From: Mytilus trossulus | Taxonomy: Eukaryota | Length of the DNA: 64,000 bases | Direction: 5' to 3' | Assembly (NCBI RefSeq): GCF_036588685.1 | Contig: NC_086381.1 | Location: 41,788,001-41,852,000, forward strand | In this document: positions 1 through 21,400 of the stretch, piece after piece | Layout: every line of letters starts with the position of its first letter | How positions within the stretch are numbered: position 1 is the stretch's first letter | The notes under the pieces: model-generated | Database searches by the model: none | What the model was told of the DNA's origin: nothing | What the model saw: only the letters and a program-made list of their open reading frames with translations | Translations under genes and position numbers: made by a program

Positions 1-463
1 TGTCCCTTTGTCTGAAAGCAATTCATACAGGAGAAGCAGAAATAACTGTTTAGAAATTTTTAAGCCTTATTACGCCTTAAAATACATTTTTTGTTAAACG
101 TTACCGGAACAGAATTGTAAAAAAACTTCCAATTAAATTAGCATGGCCTCTTGTCCATCATATTTAATCATTTTGGTCAATGTGGTTTATCATACTGGTA
201 GTTTGTTGTATATTTTTTACTTCGGAATAGCATTATCATAAACAGCTACATGTCTCATATCTCAATATAGTTGAGATCATACCTTATCATTTCAGGTCAA
301 ACTGTTTGAAATTTAAAACATAATCATCTCATTTCAATATGCTGTAAAATTACTTAATTTGATTATATTTCTTGGTCATAATTGCTTATTTGTTGTAAAG
401 AGTCCACTCATACTACAAAGTATTTCAGTATCATTTCATAATTTCAAATAAAATTCAACCTAC

Positions 464-498
464 CTGTTTATGATGACTTTGCTGAAGACCCGGAGCGT
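464..498 (-). CDS. Micro-exon T (35 nt, 1-0): (D)APGLQQSHHKQ
   Basis: tttttgttag| acceptor and CAG|gtaggt donor; GC-richer island in the correct phase. Confidence 0.65.
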
Positions 499-3400
499 CT
501 AACAAAAATAAATAAATCTAATGTATGTATCAATTTTGTCTGAATTAATAATGTAAAGCATTACTGTAAACTATTGTGACATTATGGTATTCAAATCCTT
601 AAATGTAATACTATAAGAGCAGCTTTTCTATTCACATTAGCAATCTATTTTATTCTCGTTAATTTGAATATTTGAAGAAATGAGATTCTGAATGTGAAAT
701 ATACCAGAGCAGTTATTGCCATTCCTCACTACAATCCCTGTAAGATGTTTGTTGATGTCCAGAACTCTGACGCCATCAGAGCTAACATTGACACTCCCTG
801 CAGTAGTTCTTGCTTCTATAGTCACATAATACATCTACAATTCATTCATCAATATAAAATTAAACACATTTACTATTGTGTACATTTAGCATCAAATCTT
901 TCAATAATAGAATAATTGAATGATCAATAGAAAAATTCATTTGAAACCATTTCTACAAAAATTAAACAAGGACTACTCAAAACTATATAGGTCGTCGAGT
1001 ACAGCCGCTGAGAGATTTGCGACACGGAAGATAGAAGAGATAGATGTTTAAAAGAATAAAAGGTTTGATACCAAAAAACTAGTCAGAAAAGTTAATATCC
1101 TCAGGAAATTGATGAAAATCTAACTGCTCTGGTTTTATTATATACAATATATATGACGTCGAAGACTTTCGCCAAAAATTTACGAAATAAAATATCTTTA
1201 ACACACATTTATAGTGTTTTTTAAACATATAAAAAAATATGATGATTACTGCGGATTCATAATTTTTCGTTGGACACCAATTTTTAAGGATTTCATTGAT
1301 TAAGGTGAACAACGAATTGAAATATACAACGAATGACAAATTTTCTATTTTCGTTGCGTGAAGAGATTTTTTACACCATGAAATCAAATAGTTAAGAAAA
1401 TTTAGTTTATCTTTATCCACAAAAATTAATATCAATATAAATACAATGAATCCACAGTTTGTTATTTGAATCAAATATGAACAGAGTTTTTTCCCCAAAG
1501 GAATGCAGTCTTTTCTCATTTGTCAAATCATATATCAATGAGAGAAACACTAGTAAGATAAGTAAAACATATAACGATACCTAAATTTTAATTCTGGTCA
1601 TATACTCATAGAAAGGAAAGAAATGTACTATATTGAACAATATTTATTAGGCAGGCTTATTGTCTAAGCATTTGAAGAAAGAAAAAAAAACGTTCTTTCA
1701 CCAAGATCGTAAGGTTTTAATATATACAATATTTAAAAACAAAATCATTATTGAGGGACCGGTAGTATTTCTGTCAGTATTTAAATGTGACATTCGATTC
1801 ATCACTTTCTCATACATAATTTCTAATTATACATTGTAGCTTTGAAAAGAGTGACACTTATTACCTGAAAAGGATGTAGAGTTAAACCATTAAATATTTG
1901 GACATCAATTGTAGCTAACTTAGCCATTGATGATACATCACATATTTTGGGAACTGTCCCGATGCAAGCACTGAAATTAACAATTTGATGTGGATGTTCA
2001 AAGCCGGACCATGTTACTGCTAATGTTGATCTTTCTAAGGTAAAATCTATATCTTCGTTATCCTTAAAAGAAAAGGGAGAACATTTTGATTATTTACTTC
2101 ATAACTTCCAGAAAGGATTTAAAAGAAAACAAATTAAGATATGTAGACTTAGATCTAATGAAATCGAAATCAGCAAGCCACATTGAAGTTATAATAAGTT
2201 AATTAAATATAACGTTCATAATGTTAAAAAAAATGTCTACTGTGAAATGAAAAATAAACTTTGAAATCTTTAAAACGACAACAACATGAGTGTAAACATT
2301 GCACTAATTTATATACATTATAAAAAAAGAAGATGTAATATGATTGCCAATGAGACAACTATCCACAAAACACCAAAATGACACAGACATTAACAACTAT
2401 AGGTCACCGTACGGCCTTCAACAATGAACAAAGCCCATACCGCATAGTCAGCTATAAAAAAGCCCCGATAAGACAATGTAAAACAATTCAAACGAGAAAA
2501 CTAAACATTGTTTATTAATACACATATAGGATTTACACAAACATAAACTGATTTTGTAAACCTCAATGTTAAAGTCAAATGATGAACTATGTGTACGCTC
2601 CTTGCTTTTGTTTTTTTTACCACCCCCGATGTTGGTATTACCTTTAGCTGTGTTCCAGTGTTATATGTAGGAAATACATCTACAACAACTCCTTCTGCAG
2701 GCAGCTGAACATCATGGATGTATCTCGCCGATGTCTTCGAAACTGACAGACCAGCTAAGTTTGTAGCTTTGATGGTAAAGTAGTAGGCATGGTGACCATG
2801 AAGAGTCCATTTTATGTTTATGATAGGTAACGCTGTGCAAGTTGGATGTTTAGTTTGATAACAAGGTCCAGCGAACTGTAAGTTTCTAAATGGCTGTATG
2901 TCGTACATGTCTGGTTTGTGACCTAATTAATCAAATTATACAGTTAAATATTCATTTAATATAATTTTCACAACTCTCAAACACTTAATGATGAAGCATA
3001 ACACATAAATCTTGATGCATATATATGTACCAAACACATGAACTATCACCAAAAAATATGATTGACATCACATCTATATTGCATAAACAATATATTATAT
3101 ATATACGCACCACGACATCAATCAAAGTTAATAAAAAATGTTAATGTTTACCTCACTAGTAGCACGATTTCAGTCTGAAACGGTCATTTTGGTCTGATCA
3201 CATCTTGATTGACTGGATTTACCGCTAGAGGAAATCGTCGAGACTTTTTAGACCGTTTAAGACTCCGTTACGATCGATAGTCACATCAGGTAAATCAGTC
3301 CGTTAAGGCATGTCAAGATTATCAAGACTGAATCTCCTAGCGAGCTGTTAAGATCCGTTACGACAGTGTCAGACCGAAACAGACCATGGATACAAAATTA

Positions 3401-6400
3401 CGTTAAGATGTTGTCAGACCGTGTTTAGTCGTGTTCAGATTTTATTAATTTGGACAGAAAACGGGTAAAACTTTCCCAGTGTTTATCAGGGGTTGCTCCC
3501 CTTTTAAGAATAAAATTAAAAAGAAGACGGTTTATGTTAACTGAAAGTCTGCCATGTTTTAATTAAATAAAGAAAATAATCAATTCTAATTCATACCTCT
3601 TCCTATTTAATTATTTAACATTTTGTATATTAAAAAAAACCATAAGTGGTTCAAAGTCATACTGCTGCGCAAACCGTGGTGAATTGAGTTTAAAATCGAT
3701 TATTAGTGTACGTCCAGTTGCGTACATATAACATGTATGTCGGAACAATTGTGATGATGACGAATTTCTTCCTTTATTCGAGAACAATCTAATTGATATA
3801 TAAATGTCCATAAATGAGCCAAAGAAAGTTTTATATCGACCTGTATTTAAATCTCTTCTTCTTCTTTTGGTATACAATAGTCTTTCGACATTTGATGATT
3901 ACATACTGTTGGCATACGTGGACTAGTCTACTACATGTAACAAAACTTTTACCCCAATTCACACAAAATGTATGTTTCTTTCTTATGTACAATGTATACA
4001 TGTATATATTTGAATTTGCGCTATAGTTCCGTAACTTTTTATCCTGGCGTATATACGAATGGTCGACAAGTGCGTACATTTTTTTTAATCAAAATTTCTG
4101 GTATAGTCTGATCTGTCCTTCACCATTGACAAAAAATATATATATAGATTTTTATTTCATCAAATCTGTTGTTTATTTTTAGGTATTATCTATATTTTTT
4201 ACATCAGAAATGTTATTCATAAACAAGCGTATGAGTTTAGTAATGACTAGTATATAACAGAGAGCAGAATAAAAAAGGAAAAAACCAATTTTCCTCTTTT
4301 TTCACTCTAATTTCTGACAAGTGCAATTAGAGGCCAACATAGGACAAGAACGTAATAAATTTATTCTATAACCCTTGTATTTGAGAAAAAATCATGAAAA
4401 ACAAAGACAATTCTGTAAAATTAGTATTTATTTGATGCATTTCAAAATAAATTTATACTGAATTCTACACTTTACTGTCCATTTTCATTCAACTCTCCGT
4501 GAATGATGCAACTTAGAATAAATTTATTCTAAATGCATGATGCTTTCTGTATATAATCATTTATAAAATAAATTTATTATAAAGAGCCTTGATATCTATT
4601 ATCAGTTCAAGAAAATCATAGAATAAATTTATTCTACATTTAATGTCATTTATGATTTTATAACAATATTTAAAATAAATTTATTTTGAAAGTCCAGTAA
4701 TCTGTATGGTGAGGTTGAGACACAGAATGAATTTATTCTATGTTCAATATTATTTTTGTCTTGTATAATAATATATAAAATAAATTTATTCTGAAAGTAC
4801 AGTTATCATATTAAGGTGGCGACACAGAATAAATTTATTCTACATTCAATGTGGATTAAAAGTTTTATGATAAATAAAATAAATTTATTTTGATAGTCCA
4901 GTAATAATGTTAAGGTTGAGACACAGAATAAATTTATTCTGGTTATAAAAATATGTAAAATTTGTTTAGGAAAAATTACACTGATCTGTATGATTACATC
5001 AGGCTACAGAGAATAATTTTATTTTAAATTAAACCAGCGGCGTTTTTGATAATATTTGATATGTTCACATAATAAATTTACCATGGCACTACATTTAGGT
5101 CATAGAAAAATGAGTTCCTATATAATTTTCTATCTTTCATGTCTATTCAAAGACATATAACATTCATAAAAAAGTATTTTATATTATTTGAAGTTGCAAT
5201 CTGACAATACAATACAATACATATATCTGCTATCAACAATGCAAAAGGACACTCCCTTGAAATATGAAAATATCAATTTCTTCAGCTGATTTTTTTTATG
5301 TGGGACTGAATAGAAATACTGTGCAGCAATTTTAAAAAACAAAATATCAACATATAAATGTAAATAAACAGATTAGAAATAGTAATAGTTCAACAGGTTT
5401 TTCTTAAATTGAAAATAAATCTGTTTTTTTTAAACATGTCTCTCTCTGTAGATGTACTAGCTGCGGAATCGTAGCTCTTTAGGTCCTTTTGTAATTTTTT
5501 GACTATTTACGGTCCGCAAATAGTCAAAAAATTACAAAAGGACCTAAAGAGCTACGATTCCGCAGCTATAGATGTACGTGCTATGAATTGTCCTTTTTCT
5601 GGCTTCTGGATAGGCCTGATCTGAAAGAAGTAACGACAAATTCAAAACAATTTCAAATATTTTTAGTTATCATACCAAAATTCATTATATTTGATGAAGA
5701 AACTGCCCGTCTTTCTTTTAATCTAAATCATGATGTCTATTTTGTTTACATTCACTCTCTTTATTGTCATTTATAACAGTCTTGCTCCGTGTTAAAATCC
5801 GTACTTTGACCTACAATGATTTACTTTTATTTATTGTGACTTTGATGGAGAGTTGTCTCATTGGCACCCATACCACATCTTTATATATATATATATTGCC
5901 TCTGGATACAGCAAGATAAAAATGGCTATGCTATGCACTTGAACAGTAATTGTTGATTTTTTATACAAAAAAGGGATTAACGTACACAGTAACTCATTAA
6001 ACTTTTACTATTTAAAAGTCAACACTCTATCAAATTAAAATCTCATTATTACATACCTAATCTCAATCTTCAGAAACACTGTATAAGTCAGGACTGAATA
6101 AAAATCTAGTCTTTTTTGCTGGTGTTTCATAACATTTTTCTCACCCTACAAGAAATATTTTGAAGTTTAAAATGCAGAAACACTTACTCTATTATCATGG
6201 TTATTGTTTTTCTTCAGGCATATTTCTTTATTTTTATCAGAATTGGCATGAATCGTTCCCAACTTCCTGAATATGCATGTAATATTTGTCATTAGACATT
6301 CAGCCAGTCATGACCAATCAATCAATCAATCAATCAACCGTAGAGTCTTAAAACAGATGAATGGTTCATGCCTAGGAGACAGCGAACTGAAGACACAAAT

Positions 6401-9400
6401 AACAATTAAAAACAGGTTTCATTAAGTCTTAAACAAAACACAAGACTGGTGTTGACCATACTTTTACCTACACCATTCAACATACCAGAAAACAAGTAAG
6501 ACATGTTCCAAAAAAGAACAGCAGCTTCCACAGGCAAAAGTATGAGTAATGTACTTATTGTTTTCATGAACTTTAGCAGACTGTCTGATTGACCGTTAAC
6601 TTTAATGTATGATGCAGCTGTGTTTTAACTGTAATCATTTCTAATTAGAACCGCACAATTAATTTATGTTTCTGTTTGTTTATATTCTGTTCCGATACTT
6701 GTGATCTGGAGATGAATGCAATGGATTTGACGCGACTGTCATACAAGTGTGAGGTTTAGCTAGCTATATAACCAGGTGTAATGAACGCAATACTAAACTC
6801 CAAATTGTACCTAAGAAACTAAAATTAAAAATAATACAAGACTAACAAAGGCCAGAGGCTCCTGACTTGGGACAGGCGCAAAAATGCGACGGGATTAAAC
6901 ATGTTTGTGAGATCTCAACCCTCCCCTATACCTCTAGCCAATGTAGAAAAGTATACGGATAACGATAGGCATTTAAAATACTACTATAGCAGTTAACTGA
7001 CAAACAAGAGGCCCCAGACTTCAATTAAACTGATTGAAAGATTATGTCTCCCTCTCGTTAGGGATTTAGTATCATTAGTATAATTCTTTTATGCTGTAGC
7101 TGCAATTCCGTTCCCTTTTCACGCCGATGTGACCCACCGAATATTACCGGGTTTGTAATAACATGACCAATACGACGGGAAACACGTGGAGTTCTTTTCG
7201 TTAGGGGTTTAATATATTGATTGAATATAATTATCAGTTTTCACGACAAAAATCTTAGATTCTCTCTTGCATTCCGGCTTTCTCCACCTTTACAGTTTGA
7301 TCACCACGAAATGAACAATATAGTGCTGAAAGTTACGTTAACATCTATATTTCGGTTTTATCACCCAGACTCAAGGTATAGGGTTTGAAGATCTGTTGGA
7401 AAAAAGCAACCGTTCCTAATCACAATGTTCATAATCAAAATAATGTTTTACTTTGAATACATGGAAGGCAAGGCCTCACAAGTACGAGGGTCAGGATGTG
7501 GTCAAATTTACACCATTTTTCTCTTACTATTCTTTCTATTTTTTCATCATTCTCTTTTCTGTAAACCCCCATCCACAGCCTCAGGTATAGACGAAGTGTC
7601 ATTTATGTGGCCTGGTCTAGTAATGTCAGCAGTGTGATCTGCACATATATCATTTTGTAGAAAAAGATGAAGGGGTGGCGTTAAACATTGTTTTGATGTA
7701 AGATATGATACATCTTTTCTATAAAATCGATTGATTGACAGATTGTTGGTTGCTGAACGTGCAGTGTCAAATAGTTTATGCATGCATGCACGGAACGAAA
7801 AGCTATTTTAAAACATTACATACCATGGGGAATACCTGTAATAAAGGGTAGACCAGGATGAAGTTCGGTAAGCTTTTTATACGGGTTTTACATTTTTCTA
7901 CTTGGCGGATGAAGACAATTCTATTCCCAAGTCACGTTTAAGTGTCCATGAAATCAGCAGCACCCATACATATATATATATACCTACTTTCCAATCTATT
8001 AAAACAAATAAAAGACCTTAAGGATAAGACAAAATGGTACACATTCTCAAATGCCTATTTATCGGTAATAATACTTGAGGGTCTTGTTGGATAGTCACGC
8101 GACTGGGAAACGCAGAATAAAGAACAAAACATATAGCATATACAACAAAATATAAAGAATAGAAATTAAAAAGATGATCAAATAGAGAATAAGGAGCAAA
8201 ATTATAAAAATAGAAAAAAAATGTTTTAAAAATTAAAAGAATACAGAATCGATGGACCATCCATCCAGACCATTATAATTTTGTAGTTGTCCATTTTTGT
8301 TTAACATATTATTTTATTTGAATGATATAAAATGACCATACATTAATAACCTCTATGAAATGACACAGATTCAAATAATTTACAACCTTCGATTTGTTTA
8401 ATTCATGTTAGCAAACAAGTGCCGCATATCTATCAGAAGTTTTAAAATAATTATTACTTATTACAACAAACGCGGCTTAAAAGCCTTATCAATTTTATGT
8501 AATGCACGCGTACGTTGATTGTAGGCCCCCTAGTGTTACCACACGCCGAGAAGTCTTCAAATGGAAACACAAGATAATTAATGACAAGACGTAGGACACT
8601 TAAACTGGACCCCTGCTGTGTTCACTTATCGCTACACTGACGGTGCGAAGCTATAGAAGGAACGACGAACCAGTTTACAGGACAATGATCTGTAATTTTG
8701 TATAATATGATCACTTGGTATTTCTCTCTATGTACGTGAAAGATGAAAGACAAGTGGACATCAAAAGGAGGAAAGACAAATTGAACATAGACGGGATAGG
8801 TTTCCAGTTTCGTTTATGAAACATTCATCACAGTTCAAGAAATTAGAGGTTAGTTTTGCTCAGTATACTAGAGGTGGGGTTAGGGGTGGGGGTCAAGGAT
8901 ACTGGGATCTCCTCATGGATTCCCGACATATATGCTCAATGCATACTAGACATTTTACAAGTCTCTGCTTATGCCCCTTTTCAAATCCTCGATCGATCCG
9001 CATCTGCGAATCAATTTGCATAATTCTTTACGATAGCACTGAATAAGAATAATATCGATCACTCCAAAATAAACGAGAACAATTTGGAATATAACATTTA
9101 TGGAACAAATTGACTATACTACTCTGATAATTTGTTATATCACTAAGATAAATTTATATACTACAAGTGTGGACACAGATCAGTGTGGATTGTATGTTTG
9201 GATGTTTGACAGTGTTTTGTATGACAAAAGAAGTTGTGTTTTCCCCGTTGGTTTCTATATTATTAAATATGTTGTATAATATGACAACCAACCTGATCAT
9301 TAGCAGAGTTGTTTTTTATTTGATATTTAGTTTTTTTATGTTCAAGACGGGCATAAAAGAGCTCGAGACACTAATTGCATCAGTTACCAAATGATTATGT

Positions 9401-12400
9401 CAGATAGAGTATGTTCCACATTCTTGATTTTGGATACATTATGAATTTAAGCTAGTAAAAGAGGAACACATACCAAGTTAATTTTTTCATGCGATTTTTT
9501 TTTATTGGAGATGGTATCTGAAAACATGCGAACATAAGTTTGAACGTTAAATTATTAGATAAATATTATTTATTATCTTAAGTTTAATTATTATGATATT
9601 AATAATGTTTCTAATTGGTAATCTCATTATTATTTCCTACTGGTGGAAAATGGAATAATCTTTAAAAATTAAAAAAAATAATAAGTTCACTTTCTTTACG
9701 TTTAGTCTTAGAACAGCTGTTAGGACGCACTAGCTATAAAATTGTTGCATAGAAAGAACATGTACCTATTTTTTTTTTTAGCAAAAAGTGAAAGATACCC
9801 AGGGGCGGGACCAGTCTTTTTTAAAAGAGGGTTCTAAACATTTGTTCCAATTTTAAACCACTGATTGTCAAAAAAAGGGTGTTCAAAGCACGGAGCCCTA
9901 ACTGGATCCACCAAAGGATATTTATACCCATAAGTCTATGAACTGAAAAGTAACACACCATTGCGAAAAACAATAAAAAAAAAAACGAGCAAGAGATTAT
10001 TTTATGTAAAAAAACTAGTTTTGAACATTTTCATAAGTACCTTAAGAACTGTACTCACACTCTTATGCAATCTGTTTGGCACACATAATAATTGACAAAA
10101 AGTCTCCGTCTTCATGGATAACATGACCATTTCAGTCAAAATGTAATACTGTGTTCTTTATAGGTCACCAGACACTTCTATCAAAAGGAATTTTGAAAGA
10201 AACACAAAAGTTTAGAAGGCAGACAAAATGGCAGAAGTTACTACAACCACAGAGAACATTTGGGACAGATACATTTTGAGGAAAATCTTTAGAGGTAATT
10301 TAAAAGATTAAACTTTTAACTGGCTTGAAAGAAATATCTCGGAATGCTGAAATTAAGAATCATAATTGTTTTTGAAAAGTGTTCTTTCTTATCTCATTGC
10401 AAAAGGTTTTGAAAGTGCTATTTTAAATATAATTCATATTTTGACAATTGAAGTTCGGTCGGAATGATTATAAGTGAATTAAAAGTCATTATTTTAAGAA
10501 TGCGTGCAAAGAATCGGTTACTCTATGAAAAGGAATATATTATGAATTTTAGAGCGAGGGCCTGATATGTGATGTGCGGTTGTACAATCATTTGCACATC
10601 TTATTTATACGACGATGAGATCTGGCTGCTCCTTCAGTCCTTGTACATCTCTCTGGCACATTTGCTTACTTTACAAGTTACAGTTCGTTTTTGATAAGGT
10701 TAGTGTAAGATGTTGCAAGACTTTTACCATCTTGAGTTATGCCCATTTATAAACATAAAAATAGCTGGATGTTTCGTTTCTGTTCTCTAACTTTAGTTTG
10801 CCTCAAGCAAATGTAAAAAATCGTATATACAATGCATATTACCATAAAACACAGATCAAGATTTAAATTGAGTGGCCTAACTTCTACCGTTCTTGATATA
10901 CAATGTATGAGTTAAGGCCATTTATAAACATAAAAAATGCTGAATTTTTCGTTTCCGTCCATTAACTTTACATTAGTCTGCCTCAACCGAATGTTAAAAT
11001 CACAAAACAGTCTTAACTACTTGGATCCTGTACATGTATCTCAATGTGGAAGTTGACACGTGCATATTTACGAGCAGGATCATTTGTAGCCCATAGACAC
11101 ATTTTCCATTTTGTTTTGTATGAACTGCATTTTTTTATTTGATCTTTCAGATAGCTTTGGTTGAACGGAATAATGGAAACATGTATTTGGGAATATTACA
11201 TTTACAAAGATGATTGTTCGAAAAGTTAAAAGAGTTTGAAGACGAATAATTCCAACTACAGATCTGTATGTCACTAAAAGATCAGATTACTTAACGATTA
11301 GTACCAGCTGCATTATAACGAAGCTTCAAGTTGTCTCTCGTGTGAAAAGAAAACGACCCCAAATTATTCTAATAGATGACCAGTGACAAAACATTGAACA
11401 AAAATGTTCAGGAATATATTATAAGCAAACAAAAACGACTTAGATGTATTTTTGAACTGTTTGTATGCCATCACATGATAACAAAAGAAGGTTTCCTGGT
11501 TAATGGACAATTACAAGGTTAAGTTTGGATTTCCATCGTACACTGTTTTTACAGTATGTATATAGAAATGTTGTGGTGATTAGCTGTCAATTTATTTTTT
11601 GAAGTTACTATTTTTAACATGCTGATTAAGGAATATTGATGTTAGCCGTGATTTTGTATGTCATTTTCTATTTTAAGACTTTTATATTGTTTTTAAATGG
11701 GTAGTGATGGTTGCAAATTCAATAGGTCATTTAAATTGAGATTATGACCATTATGATATCTTAAAGGATTTTATTTTTAAAAGAGGGGGTAGGTGAAAAG
11801 ATTATTTTTGAGGGGGGGGGGGGGGGGGGGGGTAATTTTCACTCATTACAGATTTCAGAAATTGAAAATGAAATTTCAAAAATCATTTTGCAAAAAAAAG
11901 AGGGGCAAGGGTATATTTTTTCTGGAGTGAGGGTTCAAATAGCAACAGCATAGTGTTCTGCACAAATGCATAAAAAAGAGGTATTTTTTTTTTGGGGGGG
12001 GGGGGGCAATTCGCAACAGCATAGTGTATTGCACAAAAGCCAAAACTTAAATATTATTCAAATGATATAACCGATTCTAAGTTCTTTGGCTACCGTTAAT
12101 CTGTGTCAGAAACCTATATTGCATTAAATAATTAATTACAATCCAAATTCAGACCTGTATCATGCACGAACATTGGGTCCATTTTTGTCCCAACTGCTTA
12201 GACGGCGTGCAAAAAGCTAAGTCTTCAAACGCCGTATAATGGAAATAATTAGATACAATGTCGTGGATCCTTTTCAGAAAACAGCGTCAAAACGCCATTT
12301 CTTTAGATTGTAACATAATACAAATTACGGTGTTCAGTCTGGACTATCGAATCATTCATATGTTGCAGATTTTATTAAACCCCTGGTTTTCCACATTTTG

Positions 12401-15400
12401 AATACCAAGTTATTTTGAAAATCAAAAGATAGCAATTACATATTTTTTCTTACCGATTCTTCCATTTTGATTATTAGTCCTTCCAAATTACTACTTCTTA
12501 CACATACCGAAGATCATTCCAAGCATATCTACTATGGTCGTTTTTGATTTTCTTGCGGTAAATTTCATATAATGTCAGTCTGAATCTGTACAATTCTATT
12601 ATACGAAAATGTGGGATACAATGTTAAATTTGTATAAGTTTTAGGTAAAAAACTCTATTTTATGCTAATTTAATGTTACAAGTTATTCCGATTTTTTGAC
12701 GTTTTCTATATGTCCGTTTCGTGCTTTATAGATTAAATATTAATTTACCTTACTAGTAATGTGGATTCTTATGGCATGCATTCATCATTTTATCATGAAA
12801 AAAAAATCTTCTTAAAAAAATATTAAAATTACATATAAATATTATATGCTTAAAGCTTTTAAAAAAGCGCATTTTACAGTTGCCGTCAACTTTGTGCACA
12901 ACGTCTTTAAAGGATTTGACCTCTACAGTCGTATCCAGTTTCGTTTGGCAAAGCAATTTATTGTATCAGTTTTCTGTAATAAATAAGACCGTTGGAATTT
13001 TCTTTTAAATTATTTTAATTTTGTATCATGTAATACTTTTAAGATTATTTTTATATTGAACAAAATTCATATTGATGTAGAATAAATTTATTCTGTGTCA
13101 CAGCCTCACCGTACAGATTACTTTATTTCAAAACAAATTGATTTTATATATTATTATACAAGACAAAAATCTCATTGAACATAGAATAAATTTATTCTGT
13201 GTTTCAACCTCACCATACAGATTACTTTCTTACTTTACTTTCAGAATAAATTTATTTTATATATTATTATACAAGACAAAAATAACATTCAACATAGAAT
13301 ACATTTATTCTGTGTCTCAACCTCACCATACAGATTACTTTATTACTTTTATTTCAAAATAAATTTATTTTATATATTATTATAATCATAAATGACATTA
13401 AATGTAGGATAAATTTATTCTGTATCACAGCCTCACCATACAGATTACTGCATGGACTTTCAAAATAAATTTATTTTAAATATTATTATAATCATAAATG
13501 ACATTAAATGTAGAATAAATTTATTTTATGATGTTCTCGAACTGATAATAGATATCAAGGCTCTTTATAATAAATTTATTTTATAATGATTATATACAGA
13601 AAGCATCATGCATTTAGAATAAATTTATTCTAAGTTGCATCATTTACTACAGTAAAGTGTAGAATTCAGTATAAATTTATTTTGAAATGTATCAAATAAA
13701 TACTAATTTTACAGAATTGTCATTGTTTTTCATGATTTTTTCTCAAATACAAGGGTTATAGAATAAATTTATTACGTTCTTGTCCTATTTTGGCCTCTAA
13801 TTGCATTTGTCAGAAATTAGAGTGAAAAAAGAGGAAAATTGTTTTTTTCCCTTTTTATTCTGCTCTCTGTTATATATAATATCACTTTCGGACACACAAG
13901 ATAGAGATGCATATTATACGAATGTAGGAAAAAAAGTCACAGGAAAAAAGTCACGGAAAAAAAGTCACGGAAAAAAAAGTCACAGGAAAAAAGGTCACAG
14001 GAAAAAAAGTCACAGGAAAAAAAGTCACAATATATATTTTTTGCATGAAATAGTCATAGGGTCTGCACATACATGTATTAACAGGAGAAACATTCCCAAT
14101 TTGTATTTTTTTTCTTATGGAAATGGTCATAAGGCCGCACATATATATGGATATATTAGCGAAACATTCCCAATAGATATTTGTTTGGAAATAGACATTT
14201 GTTAATTCATTTTATACGACTAGCTTTGGAAATTTAGATATAAATTGCAAATCATTTAAATGGAACATGTTCATGCTGGTGTACTAGATTGATACATGTT
14301 TTCAAGGATTTGTTGTAATTATTTTTGTTTTATATCTCTTAGAGATGTGAGTTTAACAGCAACAATTTCCCCTAATTTTAATAAAAGTTAGAAGTTCAGT
14401 ATATAACTTGACCACATGTTTTTTTGATTTATATAAAGATAAGTATTCTGTAATTTAGTGTTAAACAAACAACTCATTGCCATTAATAATAGCTTAGCAT
14501 TTTATACATATATATCTAGGGACTGTTGATATTGATGTGTGGCTTCTTGTGGCACCTCCCCCCTTTGTAGACCTTTTATTTCTTGTCTTCGTAGGAAGCC
14601 ATATCAATGAAATACAACTTATGCTCAATATTAAATAAAAGGACACAATCAGTTTTCCCTGTTAGTTAAAAAAGTCAATTTTGAAAAAAAGAAAATGATT
14701 TATTCAGATACACTTTTATTAGTATATATATCACGTATATAATTCCTTTATAGTTTTAAAAAATTAATCCGATACAAATATATTATGACTTTTTCAATGC
14801 ATTCGAAAACTACAGTTTAATTATTTATTGCATACATGTACATAGTGACTTTTTCACATGCATTCCAACATATTTCTGACAAATAAGTTTACTTAAACTT
14901 AATTGTGACTTTTTTTTCTTGTGCCTTTTTTTCCTGTGACTTTATTTCCGTTATACACCTAATAGTTCAAAATGGAAAGTTATAAGTTACAGGCCGTTTA
15001 CACTGACCAATACCCCTAAGACGTGAAACGATGCATGAATTTGCAAGCTCGACAGGAAATCGCCTGAATACCTGGACGTGTCACACCCCCTCCAATACCT
15101 TTGGGAGTAATACCTTTAGTCATGCAGGTGATCAGTGGAACGAAGATCCTAATTTATTTGAATAAAGTTTATTACATAAAAGAATTATGAACTAATTAGA
15201 TTTCCGAAAACAATTCAAGTTTCACGGAACAATTATTTATGATTTGAAATTTTTACTATTTAACTTATTCCAATATTATCATTATTGTTAAAAATAACAG
15301 ATCATGGTTATTAAAAAAAAAAGATAAGAAAATTTTCCGTATCAACATAGTGTGTAATATAAAAGTTAACTAGTCGGATAAAACAACCGTACGATTGACA

Positions 15401-18400
15401 AGATATCGACACGCAATTACGACTACATCGGGTTACTGTAGTTTTGTTCCTTAGACATATCTTGGGTGCAAAGGTGAGAAGGTAACACAATGGCCGACCG
15501 GAGAGAATTGATACTCTAAATTCAAAATCGATGGTGATCTCTTATCTAGCAGAATTAAACTTTAATATTCATGCATTTGAGCATTTTTATACAGAATGAA
15601 CATAATATCAATTTTTTTTTTGCGAAGTTTCCCTTTAATGAAAATTCCCAATCATCACAATAAAAAGGGTGAAACAGCTTGTATACTTTGAGCTTTCGAA
15701 CTAAATGGTAACCCCAACCCCCAACATAGAATGGTTCAAATTTTGAGTTGGAGCCGTTAGACTGCTCTATAAATTGATATAATTTGTCTCGGTGGATCCA
15801 GGGGGTTCCGGGGGTTAGACCCCCTTTTTTTGGCCGATCAATGCATTTGCATACTTGGACCCCCCTTTTACTCTGGGTTGGGACCCCCTTTTTGAAAATG
15901 GCTGGATCCGCGCCTGATTGTAGTACACTGCACTGTGAGTGTTTGTTAGATAATCACGCGCGATTTTATCATTTAAATGAAATGCTTCACGAAATAACTA
16001 AGATCAGTTTATGTGTACTCGTAACACAAAGAAGAAAAGATTGGGCTGCTTCTCTTCAATTGTGTCTAGTTACCAAAGTAACATCAAAATTTATAATTCT
16101 CTGACAATGCACCTGGTGATATATTGTATATGTCATTCCAACACTTACACTTGTTCTTTTATTTGTGTGGTTATTTAATGACCATTTTAATTCAAAGCTT
16201 GGTCAGTTGGATTTGCATCCTTCATTTTCCAGTACTCCAGAATTTCTACATACATATCACAGTAAGTAATTAAAGTTGTGTGTTAAACGTCAATGCGAAA
16301 GCAAAAAATCCATAATTTTTTTTAGAGGGCACATATGTTTCTTTCGTCTGACAGCAGGTATACACCACAGTTATCGTAAATTATAAAAACATATATAAAA
16401 AAAATCGAAAAGAAACCATTATTTTTTTTAACACAAAACAGAGAAAAGAACTGGAAAGTGCGGGGAATCCATGCGCCTTTCCTCCCTGATGTTTCGATAT
16501 TTAAAAAAATAATTATTCTTTTATCCATGTTAACACGTGAAAACTACACCAGTGAGTTCCATATATGTCATAAACTTACAGCTGGTCCTGAATATGCATG
16601 AAGTATTTGCCACTGGACTTTAAACAACCAACAATCAATCACACTACAACTTATAGTATATATAGTTGTGAAATACAAAATGTATATTATAATTATACAA
16701 TTAGCCAAATAAATAGAATACAATGATACACACTACTTTATATACTAAGTAACTGACATAATTTAAAGGAATAATCTCTAAACTATACAAGTAGAGAAAC
16801 GAAAAGTTTCTTTTGAATAGTAAACAAACTTCCGAACAGTACATGTTTTTTAATGATTTTCCCGACGGCGCTCAAATATTTTGCATGGTCTTTTAGTGTT
16901 TAGACATATGACATTGTAAGAACCTTTAACGTATAATAGATTCAAATTCGTTATTTTGTTCAATATAAGAAAAACAAAGACATGTATATTAAAAACTGAC
17001 GGTCAGACATCACTATTTAAATACGTGTATACACAAATTCATTAGTTCTTTATTAACGTTTAGCCCTCCGGCACCTTTTTTTTTTTTATTAAGAATGATG
17101 ATGAGAGTAATTGTAAAATATAATAGGCATGTTCTTTCTTACGTTATGGATCATTGATTTTGTTACCTGTTGACCCGGTTGATTACTAGCACGTGCCATT
17201 GAACTCGACCATTTTAACTAACACAGATTTTTTTTAAATTAACGCCATACATATATACTAAGTACTATATACATATAATATGAATTAGAAAATAAATTTT
17301 ATAAGGATACAACATTGTTTGAATGAACATTTTTATACGGTGATACTTTAACACGGTCCCGACAGAGACTGAATGCAGTATCATGATCAGCTTTCGGGAT
17401 CCGGGAAGTCTTTTTTTTGAATTTCCGGATGTCGAGAATATTTTTTTCCAAGTTTAATAGAGTAACTCGCACGAAAAAAACATAAAAAAGCAACAGCTTC
17501 CACGGTAAACTATGACATATATCAACAGATAACGAATTAAAGCAACTGTAACACATAAAACAAAAATATGCATGTGTTAATTTGCCTCCGTTGCATTTCT
17601 GTGGATTGTCTCATTGGCAATCATACCACATTTCCTTAACTTTTTAAGGTAACGTTTAGGATTTTCCGTTACTTTTTAATCTTCAAATACGAAACACATT
17701 TTCACCGGTGTTCACATTTTAAGGTTAAATTGATGGCATACATTTTGGTGTGTATACAATAAACATACGTCCTTGCATTTAATTATCAATATATATATTC
17801 ATATAAACTAACATTTATTAAAAAATAAACAATTATATAGACGAATAATTTAGTAGTTCCTCAACAAAACAAGAAAAGAAATAAAGAATCAACAGAAGAT
17901 TTAATCCTTATCTATCTTTTAATTAACCAAAATATACTTCAAATTATAATTATATTAAAATACATGTATATTAATCTAAAATGCATTATCGAGTAGAAGG
18001 GGCGCAACTCGTGGTATCAAACCGATATACTGAACGGATCTAAACAGGGTCTGAAAATTTTGAACGTAATTTTGTATCCATGGTCTGTTTTGGTCTGACA
18101 CTGTCTTAACGGGTCTAAACAGCCCGCTAGACGATTCAGTCTTTTCCGTCTGGACATGCCTTAACGAACTGATTTACCTGATGCGGCTATCGATCGTAAC
18201 GCAGTCTTAACGGTCTAAAATGTCTCGACGATTTCCTCTAGCGGTAAATCCAGTCAATCAAGATGTGATCAGACCAAAATGACCGTTTCAGACTGAAATC
18301 GTGCTACTAGTGCCTGTACCGATGAGTTTATCTTCATACAGAAAATTAAAAAAACATTGCAAGCTCCCCATGAATTAACCATATTCAAATACAGCCATCG

Positions 18401-21400
18401 CTTTGATCAAAGCGCTCTAGGTGAAGGCAAATATTTTCCATTCAAATAAATGAACGCTCTATTGAATTGATGTTATAGAACGGAGCAAATTTAATTAGTG
18501 ACATGCTTAAACTATTTACAATAACGTTTTTGGATACGTTTGGATAATTTTAAATGATAATGTTTTTTATATATGTCTAATATGATTTACAAAATGGCTT
18601 ATAACAAATTTTAGCGTCGTTTGTTAAAGTGTCATTGGTTTGATGATTTTCAGTTTCTATAAAATGCTTATATTCGTCGTTTTTTGACGTCGGGTAGCTC
18701 ATTCATAAAAAAAACCCCAAAACATATGATGGAATGTTTTGCAAATGTAATAAAATTTATAAAGTAAGCTAGCTATAAAACCAGGTTTAATCCAACTTCT
18801 ACATAAGAAAAATGCCTGTATCAAATTAAACATGACAGTTGTTATCCATTCGTTTAATGTGTTTGAGCGTTTGATACTGCATTTGATTACGGACTTTCAA
18901 TTTTGAATAATCCTTGGTGTTCGATGTTTTTGTTATTTTACATTTTTCTAACATAATGTACACATATACTACTTGCCAACTGCGTATTGGAAATGCATTG
19001 GAAAAGGGTCATCTGGATCCACGAAAGCACCAACTGACCAATTTGCAATTAGATTTTCATCTACTAAATTAACGTCAATCTGATCACCAGCAAACTGTGG
19101 TTTTGTTGTGTCAACAATAAATGGACCAATACTCTGAAATATAAATAATAGTTCTCAAAGGAACTTTCGTAAACTTATACATGTAATAATAATACAAATG
19201 AACACCAAATTTAACACTGTTGATACATTCAAGGAGGTTCAAGGGTATTAATCAATTTTTTTTTAAATATAGGATTTTGCTTTTTTTTTTTCAATAAAAA
19301 ACATTATCATATACTTAATAGAAAAATAAAATACTCACAGTCTGCCTTTCAAAATAGCATGAATTTTTGCTAAAGTTCTTTTTTCTATTAAGTTAAAAGG
19401 AGAAATAGAGGTATTATCAAAATGAATAAAGAACTAAATTACAAAACTCATTTTAATTTTACAGTTGTTTTGTTTAATTATACGAACAGCTTCTTTGAAT
19501 AAAATAATGAAAAAATAGGTCATCGATGAGTTAAAAAAAAATTCAATTTAATGCAAACAATTGTCATCTGGGCCCATAATGAATTGATTTGTTTGGTTAA
19601 TTTATGCAACATATTATAAAGTTACAACTAACAGTGTGATAAATAATATTTGTAATGAAAACTATACTGTTCAAATTTTTGCTGAAATTTTTGTACCCTC
19701 GAGCTTTAAGTACATGTACTTTAATGTACCATTGTTTCTTTATTCAATAATTGTTAAGATATAATTACTATTATTCTGACTGTATAATTTTGAATCATAT
19801 AATTACTATTATTCTGACTGTATAATTTTGAATCATAATATAAATTAAGTTACCAGGATACTGTACACCATGTGCTACTCATTAAAATAACACACGAGCT
19901 CTTGACAAATCTTATAGGATCTAAGGTTATTATGGGTTTTTATGTTGGATTCATGTTGTTAAAAATTTAACAGTAGTATTTTAGGTTGTTTATGACGTCA
20001 ACATTTCTCGTTGTCCAATGGTGATGTTCGTGCTTATTTGATTCTAATTAGTTACCCTCTCTTATCGTATTGCAATATCTCGCTCATGCTTGATTTTATT
20101 TTATTGTACAATGATGATTTCATTATGCCGATCGTTTGTCTGAATTTACAAGTTATTTATCTCAACGAAAATGCATAAGGGCATCATTTTCTGTATTGTA
20201 AAAATTGTGAATACGTTAATATAAATACGTTGCAATATAATGACTAATCAAATAAATATAACCTGTATGCCTTCAACTCCAGCTTTACTTATTGATTTAA
20301 TGATAACGTGAAATTCCTTTCCATCTGGAACATCGGGGTGATTCAGTCTGAAATGTGTATGGTGTTTGGTTGTTCGAAATGGCACTATGTCGGGGGCAGA
20401 ACTGTGTGTGGTTGAGGACAGTCCCACTTCGTAATCATGAATTAATTTGTAATCAATTCCTGACTTCCAAATCATTTTAAACTGAAAATAAAATTATTAT
20501 TTAATATAATTTTACATATGAGATAGGAATACACACTTATTTTAGTATACCATAGAAATTTTATAGAAAATATTGATGCAATATTAATGATTTCCAGTGT
20601 CAGTTTTCAGATATTGTTGAACTTATAATAAAATGTCTTTAATTGATCAAAGTTGTGTCTAATGAGTAGTCTTCTCATATACAATCATATCATTACATTT
20701 CCTTGCTGGCATTTCAGATAGAAACGTATTGATTTAGCGAGTACTATTAACAGGACAGTAACTTTTGCTATCTTAATACAACCCAGAAGAACAAAAGAAC
20801 CATTGAAACTGCCATACTTAATATGGTCAACGTTCCACGTGATAGTACCGTGCGTTGTTTTAATAAAGAAAGACACACCAAAATGCAATGAATACTCACG
20901 GGCAAACATTCTTATTTGATGATTAACCATATCATCTTGGTCACATCATACCAGTTATTGAATTTCCACTTAATTGGTTATTTCCGTCTGACACGTTTGG
21001 GTATACATATGATATCGTTTATTAGGATTTGTTTTTCATTCGGAAAACATTTTGACGGTTAATCCCAAATTGTCTATTTTTGAACTTACATTCATCAAAG
21101 GTTGTGTTCGTTTATGACGGCATTTTGCACAATTCATCAGAGGACTTTAAAGATCAGACCAATCCAGATTTAGAGTATCGATTCAATATAAACATTTAAC
21201 CAGTGCAACTAAATATAGATGGAACTAACAAAATTCCCAAGTTTGGGTATACATGTGCATTATATATTTGTACAGCTGTCAAAATTTGCTTTATTTCTTT
21301 TCATGTCTGATTAAACATTATGATTTGGGTATTGCTGACAAGCGAATTGTAAAGTTGCTCTTTCTAAATCATGAAATCCAAGTTAACAAGGTTTTCTATT

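What the first reader, a model, noticed from the sequence alone, without database searches (positions are those of the whole stretch)
3151..18315. Young 15-kb CACTA-type element acting as a cargo carrier
Seen: literal CACTA...TAGTG termini, a 3-bp TSD (CCT), 91 bp of perfect terminal identity and ~285-bp TIRs, but no transposase. The interior is a mosaic of other elements and ordinary-looking genomic DNA. Established: CACTA ends with 3-bp TSDs define EnSpm/CACTA, and Pack-CACTA elements are known mainly from plants. Inference: this is a Pack-type giant element in a mollusc that can move multi-kb blocks, a possible mechanism for mussel hemizygosity and presence-absence variation.
Basis: partly seen in the sequence, partly recalled or inferred. 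Interest (0 to 1): 0.8.

Follow-up and report, generated by a model that had tools for sequence, protein, structure and literature searches.

The report
Gene-less mussel CACTA-type transposon, nested insert
This 15-kb block is one real, recent insertion of a common gene-less cut-and-paste transposon in a mussel genome, and most of its supposed cargo is the family's own non-coding body plus a second transposon that landed inside it, so it is ordinary.

Summary
Window 3154-18312 is bounded by CACTAGTAGCAC.../...GTGCTACTAGTG, with 91 perfect terminal bases, ~285-bp inverted ends at 90%, and CCT on both sides. A colinear duplicate of the flanks 136 kb downstream carries CCT once and no element, so this is one insertion with a 3-bp target duplication.

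The "Pack-type cargo carrier" reading does not hold. The terminal 30-mer occurs 527 times in the 1.30-Gb genome (control 0), which suggests about 260 elements.
- Six other copies were read, five of them end to end.
- Four of those five share a ~12.9-kb body; the fifth has a 3.1-kb internal deletion.
- Copies differ by 0.9-1.7% in substitutions.
- No protein-family match was found in that body.

Against the reference copy, the window copy has two private changes:
- a 7.1-kb internal deletion at 3697/3698;
- a 9,616-bp insertion (4256-13871, 4-bp duplication ATAT) of a second inverted-repeat family. That insertion itself holds a 111-bp palindromic miniature element with a 9-bp duplication.

No captured gene fragment and no autonomous partner were found. 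Whether this locus is hemizygous could not be read from public contigs. Interest is low.

The parts
3151..3153 (.). Left copy of the 3-bp target-site duplication (CCT)
   Evidence: CCT is present only once at the empty-site paralogue.
3154..3438 (+). Left terminal inverted repeat, starting CACTAGTAGCAC
   Evidence: 100% identical over 287 bp to at least 9 other genomic copies.
3154..3697 (+). Left 544 bp, shared with all 29 other sampled copies at 95-99%
   Evidence: All 27 other copies whose sequence the probe found (2 of the 29 were missed) continue with a common sequence that this copy lacks.
3697..3698 (.). Junction of a private ~7.1-kb internal deletion (positions 551-7676 of the C1 reference copy are missing), with no microhomology
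   Evidence: Only the window itself spans the junction among the 40 scored of 872 candidates.
3698..4255 (+). Segment of the family's own non-coding body (C1 copy positions 7677-8250)
   Evidence: 97% identity.
4252..4255 (.). Left 4-bp target duplication (ATAT) of the nested element
   Evidence: The uninterrupted site GACTAGTATATATAATATC is seen in copies C1, C10 and C11.
4256..13871 (.). Nested 9,616-bp element of a second family. Ends read AACAGAGAGCAG...CTGCTCTCTGTT. The inverted arms are about 650 bp and built of ~100-113-bp subrepeats.
   Evidence: The junction is private to this copy. No Pfam match in 54 frames.
5458..5568 (.). 111-bp palindromic miniature element inside the nested element, flanked by the 9-bp duplication TAGATGTAC (5449-5457 and 5569-5577)
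   Evidence: (pair I12, 55-nt arms, 98%). The empty site is seen in L044.
13872..13875 (.). Right 4-bp target duplication (ATAT) of the nested element
13872..18312 (+). Right-hand 4.4 kb of the family's own non-coding body, ending in the right terminal inverted repeat (about 18028-18312)
   Evidence: 95.8-99% identity to the C1 copy; for the repeat.
18313..18315 (.). Right copy of the 3-bp target-site duplication (CCT)

Best explanation
Window 3154-18312 is one copy of an abundant, young, gene-less (non-autonomous) cut-and-paste DNA transposon family with CACTA-type ends. A transposase supplied in trans, not identified here, inserted it once at a CCT target. That produced the 3-bp duplication.

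The family's reference form is a ~12.9-kb non-coding body between ~285-bp inverted ends. This copy differs from it by two private rearrangements:
- a clean 7.1-kb internal deletion;
- a nested 9.6-kb insertion of an unrelated inverted-repeat transposon (4-bp duplication), which itself received a 111-bp palindromic miniature element (9-bp duplication).

The 'mosaic interior' is therefore family body plus nested transposons, not packaged host genes.

Shown here: the single insertion, the target duplications, the family structure, the private deletion and nesting, and the lack of detectable coding capacity.

Inferred: the superfamily (CACTA/EnSpm of the CMC group), mobilisation in trans, and the order of events.
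For: - Ends and duplication.
- Empty site: a colinear duplicate 136,088 bp downstream has CCT once and no element. It matches window 1-3099 at 97% and window 18313-19795 and 19926-23192 at 92% and 90%.
- Family size: 527 exact or near-exact terminal 30-mers against 0 for the control. Among the first 100 listed, 28 adjacent +/- pairs span 5.4-46 kb, with a median of about 15 kb.
- Target duplications in other copies: 4 of 5 other complete copies have matching 3-bp flanks of varied sequence (ATA, GAA, CGT, ATA). One does not (ATG/GAT).
- Shared body.
- Private deletion and nested-insertion junctions.
- Nested element duplication: 4 bp in 4 of 4 pairs read (ATAT, ATAC, ACAG, TTTA).
- No coding signal. 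Rfam gave no match. tblastn of the genome's own 861-aa Transposase_21-type frame and two neighbouring frames against 7 copies plus one diverged copy gave no hit at E<=1.
- Youth.
Against: - No transposase with these ends was found, so the superfamily rests on ends and duplication length alone.
- None of the 46 Transposase_21 (PF02992) matches in the genome lies closer than 57 kb to any of the 100 listed termini. The other 427 termini were not listed.
- One of the five other complete copies lacks a matching duplication.
- The genome searches score only the best 40 candidates. 'Private' junctions are therefore private among the best-scoring matches, not proven unique.
- Small spliced exons under 45 aa would escape the frame scans.
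- The duplicate that holds the empty site could be a retained alternative haplotype rather than a true paralogue. This was not resolved.
Confidence: 0.85

Rival explanations
1. One reading: a Pack-type CACTA element that captured host genomic DNA or genes and moves multi-kb blocks of it.
For: It has no transposase and a large interior. Two sampled copies (C11, C12) share a ~650-bp segment that replaces 51 bp of the body. So internal variants are propagated to new loci.
Against: - The interior outside the nested transposon is the same body in four of the five other complete copies; the fifth lacks 0.25 kb of it.
- An 87%-diverged older copy matches that body over about half of the stretch held for it, the first ~6 kb.
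- 0 of 90 and 0 of 54 frames have a credible Pfam match.
- The longest body frame has no homologue in the word-index protein search within 0.55-1.75x its length.
- The remaining 9.6 kb has its own inverted ends and a 4-bp duplication, and belongs to a family with 73 candidate ends.
Confidence: 0.05
2. Passive hitch-hiking: the 9.6-kb nested transposon entered the CACTA-type copy at a previous locus, and the composite then moved here as a unit. On this reading the element did carry 'cargo', though only another transposon.
For: A transposase acting on the ends should move whatever lies between them (established knowledge of cut-and-paste elements, not tested here). Paired-end distances range up to 46 kb. 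Sampled copies carry private internal insertions of 0.3-5.2 kb, including a LINE.
Against: The nested junction was found nowhere else among the 40 scored of 802 candidates. The simpler reading is insertion in place. For a cut-and-paste element, however, uniqueness does not decide the order of events.
Confidence: 0.2
3. The family belongs to a superfamily other than CACTA/EnSpm and resembles it only by its first five bases.
For: No transposase is linked to these ends.
Against: 5'-CACTA...TAGTG-3' ends combined with 3-bp duplications of varied sequence (CCT, ATA, GAA, CGT, ATA) are the classical signature of CACTA/EnSpm (recalled knowledge). The genome carries 46 Transposase_21 matches, many with long open frames. 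Earlier notes of this scan report autonomous CACTA-group elements in the same genome (leads, not tested).
Confidence: 0.12
4. The two ends belong to two separate short elements that happen to face each other.
Against: The empty-site duplicate joins the two outer flanks exactly, with a single CCT. The interior is colinear with full family copies apart from one deletion and one nested insertion.
Confidence: 0.01

Closest known systems
Non-autonomous internal-deletion derivatives of En/Spm (CACTA) elements, such as dSpm/I of maize (recalled, not from a call)
   Same: CACTA ends, a 3-bp target duplication, no transposase, an internal deletion relative to a longer relative, and several CCGTT-type short motifs within the inverted ends (5 of 9 window matches lie in the two ends).
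   Different: Here even the longest common form (~12.9 kb) has no detectable coding capacity, and no autonomous parent with the same ends was found. The host is a mussel, not a plant.
Pack-CACTA / Pack-TYPE elements of plants (PMC6379663 and PMC8903248; only the search listing with the start of each abstract was seen)
   Same: A non-autonomous element with CACTA-type ends and a large non-transposase interior.
   Different: By those abstracts, Pack-TYPE elements are defined by capturing fragments of chromosomal or coding DNA. No captured gene fragment was found here, and copies share one common body instead of diverse captured pieces.
CMC-EnSpm insertions polymorphic in oysters (bioRxiv 10.64898/2026.02.10.705023; passages read)
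   Same: The host is a bivalve. Recently active DNA transposons of the same nominal superfamily contribute insertions, and transposon-related variants make up 47-64% of hemizygous variants in four oyster genomes.
   Different: That work concerns oysters and, per the passage, families for which autonomous elements were identified. Here the family is gene-less and the hemizygous state of this locus was not shown.
   Same: Same genome, same kind of element, and the same conclusion that the interior is the family's own shared body.
   Different: I could not verify whether it is the very same family. That note gives 326-bp ends and about 150 copies. I found ~285-bp ends and 527 termini.

Membership tests
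CACTA/EnSpm (CMC superfamily) DNA transposons | Terminal inverted repeats beginning 5'-CACTA/G and ending TAGTG-3' | tested here: met
   The same ends occur in five other complete copies and in 527 genomic termini.
CACTA/EnSpm (CMC superfamily) DNA transposons | 3-bp target-site duplication | tested here: met
   CCT/CCT here, with a single CCT at the empty site. 4 of 5 other complete copies have matching 3-bp flanks; 1 of 5 does not.
CACTA/EnSpm (CMC superfamily) DNA transposons | Mobilised by a DDE transposase of the EnSpm type (Pfam Transposase_21, PF02992), encoded by the element or by an autonomous relative with matching ends | tested here: inconclusive
   No such domain in the window copy or in a full copy. 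The genome has 46 PF02992 matches. None lies within 57 kb of the 100 listed termini, and 427 termini were not listed.
CACTA/EnSpm (CMC superfamily) DNA transposons | Subterminal short repeated motifs (transposase-binding sites) | tested here: inconclusive
   CCGTTWMG occurs 3 times in the left end and 2 times, inverted, in the right end. That is 5 of 9 window matches, against a chance mean of 2.3 for the whole window. The motif was chosen by eye from the sequence, so this is weak.
Pack-TYPE (Pack-CACTA) elements | Interior made of captured fragments of host genes or chromosomal DNA | tested here: not met
   The interior is the shared family body plus a nested transposon. 0 of 144 frames have a credible Pfam match. 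The longest body frame has no homologue.
Pack-TYPE (Pack-CACTA) elements | Different copies carry different captured pieces between the same ends | tested here: not met
   The five other complete copies and the window copy are colinear over the body, apart from private indels and nested insertions such as a LINE.
Nested element: a DNA transposon family with a 4-bp duplication (superfamily open) | Inverted ends plus a target duplication of constant length | tested here: met
   About 650-bp arms at 92-97%. A 4-bp duplication in 4 of 4 pairs read. No transposase was seen in the window copy, and full-length relatives could not be fetched.

The most novel reading that the evidence does not exclude
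A lineage of very large (~13 kb) entirely non-coding CACTA-type elements has kept much of its body layout across at least 13% sequence divergence. It has recently amplified to about 260 copies (roughly 3 Mb) with no autonomous element sharing its ends. This implies cross-mobilisation by a transposase with different ends. Such elements, further swollen by nested transposons, would be a regular source of 10-20-kb hemizygous blocks in mussels.
Probability: 0.25. Interest if true: 0.4.

Novelty: new member of a known kind. Interest (0 to 1): 0.22.

Why it matters
The result removes a tempting but unsupported claim, a plant-style gene-packing transposon in a mollusc, and replaces it with a precise anatomy. 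That anatomy is a three-level nest of cut-and-paste elements with 3-, 4- and 9-bp duplications, each confirmed by an empty site.

It documents a high-copy, recently active, gene-less 13-kb family. Families of this kind are a plausible contributor to the large insertion/deletion heterozygosity reported in bivalves. That idea is already published for oysters, and this copy carries no gene. The open point of modest interest is which transposase moves a ~260-copy family when no coding relative shares its ends.

Tried and rejected
**Autonomous partner**
- I scanned a full 12.9-kb copy: 90 frames >=45 aa against Pfam gave nothing credible.
- I listed frames >=130 aa in six 20-kb stretches. The only coding frames inside the elements were two LINE-type frames (355 and 921 aa) nested in the C14 copy. 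Other frames of 131-183 aa were not scanned. The three in the C5 stretch lie beyond the part that matches the family.
- I searched the genome for PF02992 (46 matches) and compared their places with the first 100 listed termini. The nearest is 57 kb away.
- I fetched 10 kb around one member of a group of 10 matches with 861-aa open frames (L063). It has no family ends and no similarity to the family.
- Outcome: the partner was not found. 427 of 527 termini were never listed, so absence is not shown.

**Locus genotype in other individuals**
- I laid Logan contigs of four runs on window 1654-4655.
- Among the pieces that one search listed (32, with 182,299 more not shown), those on the flank stop at 3099 (X1, X2) or 3081 (X8), next to a TA-rich run. 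None listed bridges 3153/3154.
- Filled or empty could therefore not be read. The call does show family sequence, with 0 differences over 100-129 bases, in runs of organisms B and E.
- Among the 24 loose ends shown (1,651 more not shown), none lies at the left junction.

**Helitron check.** I considered whether the 7.1-kb stretch absent from the window copy is instead a Helitron-like or other insertion in the other copies. I rejected this. All 27 sampled copies that the probe found (of 29 other copies) carry the stretch beyond position 544. There is no duplication at its borders and no Helitron-type ends. The window junction is private.

**Polinton/Maverick check for the nested element.** The size and long inverted ends suggested it. 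I rejected it because the duplication is 4 bp, not 6 bp, and no protein match was found. Its class stays open.

**Other negative searches.** Rfam and one protein word search of the longest body frame found nothing. Pfam scans of ten flanking frames found only a zf-RVT remnant at 56618-57118, so the host-gene context is unknown.

**Literature.** A search for 'CACTA' + 'Mytilus' returned 15 papers by listing. None appeared to be on such elements in mussels. 'EnSpm' + 'bivalve' + 'non-autonomous' returned one preprint. Supplementary files were not opened. Data Note 17 of PMC7653742, on transposons flanking dispensable genes (mentioned in a passage), may bear on the hemizygosity question and was not seen.
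Full report
**1. The observation**

The left end reads ...gtttaCCT|CACTAGTAGCACGATTTCAG... at 3154. The right end reads ...CTGAAATCGTGCTACTAGTG|CCTgtaccg..., ending at 18312.
- The inverted ends are perfect for 91 bases, match at 103 of 104 ungapped, and are about 90% identical over ~285 bases.
- No frame between the ends exceeds 134 aa.
- The window contains no N.

**2. More than chance, and a single insertion**

The terminal 30-mer (<=2 mismatches) occurs 262 times forward and 265 times reverse in the 1.30-Gb assembly. The control pattern occurs 0 times.

- The 300 bases left of the element match a second place on the same contig up to C9:41928248.
- The 300 bases right of it match from C9:41928246.
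- The fetched 300-bp stretch reads ...atgtttatgtttaCCTgtaccgatgagttt..., so the two outer flanks are joined through one CCT.

This second place is part of a colinear duplicate 136,088 bp downstream.
- Window 1-3099 matches it at 97%.
- Window 18313-19795 matches at 92% and window 19926-23192 at 90%.

Whether it is a true segmental duplicate or a retained alternative haplotype I could not decide. Either way it is an unoccupied site. It shows that the 15,159 bp entered as one insertion that duplicated 3 bp. The 'two separate elements' alternative is refuted.

**3. What the family looks like**

Thirty loci holding the left end were fetched, one of which is the window's own.
- All 29 other copies share the first 544 bp with the window copy at 95-99%.
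- The 27 of them that the probe found then continue with a common sequence that the window copy lacks (2 loci were missed by the probe).

For six copies, 20 kb were read. Five are complete:

| Copy | Length (bp) | Flanking 3 bp (left/right) |
|---|---|---|
| C1 | 12,875 | ATA/ATA |
| C10 | 15,797 | GAA/GAA |
| C11 | 18,545 | CGT/CGT |
| C12 | 10,181 | ATA/ATA |
| C14 | 18,851 | ATG/GAT, no match |

The sixth (C5) matches the family only over its first ~7.8 kb, and no right end was found in the 20 kb held.

The five complete copies are colinear over a common ~12.9-kb body (C12 lacks 3.1 kb of it). They differ by private indels and nested insertions of 0.3-5.2 kb. These include a LINE with 355- and 921-aa frames in C14. 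Two copies, C11 and C12, share a ~650-bp segment that replaces 51 bp of the body.

Other family properties:
- Substitution divergence between copies over the right-hand 3.2 kb is 0.9-1.7%.
- An older copy, 87% identical, with the same first 20 bases, lies next to the C12 copy. It is colinear over the first ~6 kb.
- Among the first 100 listed termini, 28 adjacent +/- pairs span 5.4-46 kb with a median of about 15 kb. A 15-kb copy is therefore typical, not giant, for this family.

**4. Anatomy of the window copy**

Against the C1 copy:

| Window element positions | C1 positions | Identity |
|---|---|---|
| 1-544 | 1-550 | 98.5% |
| 545-1103 | 7677-8250 | 97% |
| 10718-15159 | 8245-12875 | 95.8-99% |

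Two things differ.

(a) C1 positions 551-7676 (7.1 kb) are missing.
- The junction lies at window 3697/3698.
- It is clean, with no microhomology and no duplication.
- A 200-base probe across it is matched end to end only by the window itself. Every other match among the 40 scored of 872 candidates covers one half.

(b) Window 4256-13871 (9,616 bp) is an insertion.
- Copies C1, C10 and C11 read GACTAGTATATATAATATC uninterrupted there.
- The insert has ~650-bp inverted arms at 92-97%, built of ~100-113-bp subrepeats.
- It belongs to a second family with 73 candidate ends, whose paired ends lie 4.6-23 kb apart.

Across 19 ends of that second family, the base before ACAGAGAG is always A. The element therefore starts AACAGAGAG and the duplication is 4 bp:
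- ATAT here;
- ATAC, ACAG and TTTA in the three other pairs for which both ends were held.

That is 4 of 4 pairs. Family ends share at least 1.7 kb with each end of the window insert. The left junction of the insert is again matched end to end only by the window.

Inside the insert lies a 111-bp perfect-hairpin miniature element (5458-5568). It is flanked by TAGATGTAC on both sides, and relatives carry that 9-mer once.

The structure is a three-level nest, each level with its own target duplication and its own empty site.

**5. Coding capacity and 'cargo'**

- Pfam scans of every stop-to-stop frame >=45 aa gave no credible match: 90 frames of the C1 copy (best E 0.008) and 54 frames of the nested insert (best E 0.00078 to an unrelated zinc ribbon).
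- The longest frame of the shared body (132 aa, 15558-15953 minus strand) found no relative in the word-index protein search. That search sees only proteins 0.55-1.75x that length.
- Rfam gave nothing over 2000-19500.
- tblastn of the genome's own 861-aa Transposase_21-type frame and two neighbouring frames found nothing at E<=1. The subjects were seven family copies and the diverged copy.

There is thus no sign of captured genes. About 5.0 kb of the interior is family body and 9.6 kb is a nested transposon.

By the abstracts seen in the listing (PMC6379663, PMC8903248), Pack-TYPE elements are defined by capture of chromosomal or coding DNA. That feature was tested here and not met.

**6. Mechanism**

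*Most likely.* A transposase supplied in trans recognises the CACTA-type ends and moves the element by cut and paste, with a staggered 3-bp cut at a target of no fixed sequence (CCT, ATA, GAA, CGT, ATA). The internal deletion is of the kind classically produced by incomplete repair after excision. This is recalled knowledge and was not tested.

*Not settled.* The nested element either inserted here afterwards, which is the simpler reading, or travelled in with the copy. The data do not decide.

*Not identified.* The genome has 46 PF02992 matches, including 10 matches with 861-aa open frames. None lies within 57 kb of any of the 100 listed termini. The one such locus fetched has neither the ends nor any similarity. 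Absence of a partner is therefore not shown.

**7. Hemizygosity**

Contigs of four public runs were laid on window 1654-4655.
- Among the pieces the call listed, those on the flank stop at 3099 or 3081, before the junction, so the locus could not be genotyped. Only 32 pieces were listed, with 182,299 more not shown.
- Family sequence with 0 differences over 100-129 bases is present in runs of organisms B and E.
- In run X1 (organism A), the best holder and possibly the source sample, the listed pieces on the flank show 1-4 differences.

The general idea that transposon insertions create hemizygous blocks in bivalves is in print for oysters. Transposon-related variants are 47-64% of hemizygous variants there, and CMC-EnSpm is named among the active DNA transposons (bioRxiv 10.64898/2026.02.10.705023, passages). 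The mussel pan-genome paper leaves the role of transposons open (PMC7653742, passages). This copy carries no gene, so it bears on sequence presence-absence only, not on gene presence-absence.

**8. Earlier notes of this scan**

These are leads, not evidence.
- s1-820617 describes a gene-less 15-kb CACTA-type family of about 150 copies in this genome. It names the species as Mytilus trossulus and reaches the same conclusion. I reached my reading before seeing it and could not check whether it is the same family.
- s1-827134 flags my nested element separately as 'foldback-like'.
- s1-829913, s1-826637 and s1-823514 report autonomous or defective giant CACTA-group elements with other ends in the same genome.

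The scan has therefore met this kind of element before on other DNA.

**9. Verdict**

The CACTA-type non-autonomous assignment is supported on ends and duplication only. The Pack-type cargo reading is not supported. This is a new member of a known kind, of low interest. One modest open question remains: which enzyme moves a ~260-copy, 13-kb, gene-less family.

Noticed in passing
window 4256-13871: The nested 9.6-kb element has ~650-bp inverted arms made of ~100-113-bp subrepeats, ends reading AACAGAGAGCAG, and a 4-bp target duplication (4 of 4 pairs). It belongs to a family with 73 candidate ends, whose paired ends lie 4.6-23 kb apart. No coding capacity is seen in this copy, and the superfamily is open. 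Another reader flagged it separately (s1-827134).
   Followed up: partly
window 5458-5568: A 111-bp perfect-hairpin miniature element (55-nt arms, 98%) with the 9-bp target duplication TAGATGTAC. It is absent from the same site in relatives of the nested family.
   Followed up: yes
window 1-3099 and 18313-23192 versus G000:C9:41924089-41933050: A colinear duplicate of the flanking region lies 136 kb downstream on the same contig (97% on the left, 90-92% on the right), with its own extra ~0.3-kb and ~0.7-kb pieces. Whether it is a segmental duplication or a retained second haplotype is undecided.
   Followed up: partly
window about 2305-2529: A ~200-bp very high-copy repeat. The 3,153-bp left-flank query had 3,050 first-look candidates, and 39 of its 42 scored matches lie on this part at 72-96% identity. 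Contig depth there is orders of magnitude above the flanks in all four runs.
   Followed up: no
window about 23195-24312: A block whose ~570-bp part recurs in tandem arrays with a ~368-bp offset at many loci (contigs C2, C7, C1, C11, C6, C14, C63, C40). There it is flanked by ~300-bp segments in opposite orientation. It looks like a transposon carrying an internal satellite.
   Followed up: no
window 56618-57118 (minus strand): A 167-aa frame with a zf-RVT match (E 2.5e-08), a retroelement remnant. It lies just downstream of the retrotransposon another reader noted at 50711-56070.
   Followed up: no
L039 (G000:C12, about 3,794,900-3,803,700): An older copy of the same lineage with the same first 20 bases, 87% identical to the young family and colinear over the first ~6 kb of the body. 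The non-coding body has been kept over considerable divergence.
   Followed up: partly
G000, 46 places listed; L063 = G000:C10:28471001-28481000: The genome holds 46 Transposase_21 (PF02992) matches. They include 10 matches with 861-aa open frames, nine of them with identical scores, which suggests a recently active EnSpm-type element. In L063 the frame has a further long frame (>=554 aa) 1.8 kb downstream. Its ends were not found within 10 kb.
   Followed up: partly
L031+L040 (G000:C14:33124651-33143501): This family copy has unmatched 3-bp flanks (ATG/GAT), one changed base in the right terminus, and a nested LINE with 355- and 921-aa frames. It may be a recombinant of two copies or a mutated duplication.
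   Followed up: no
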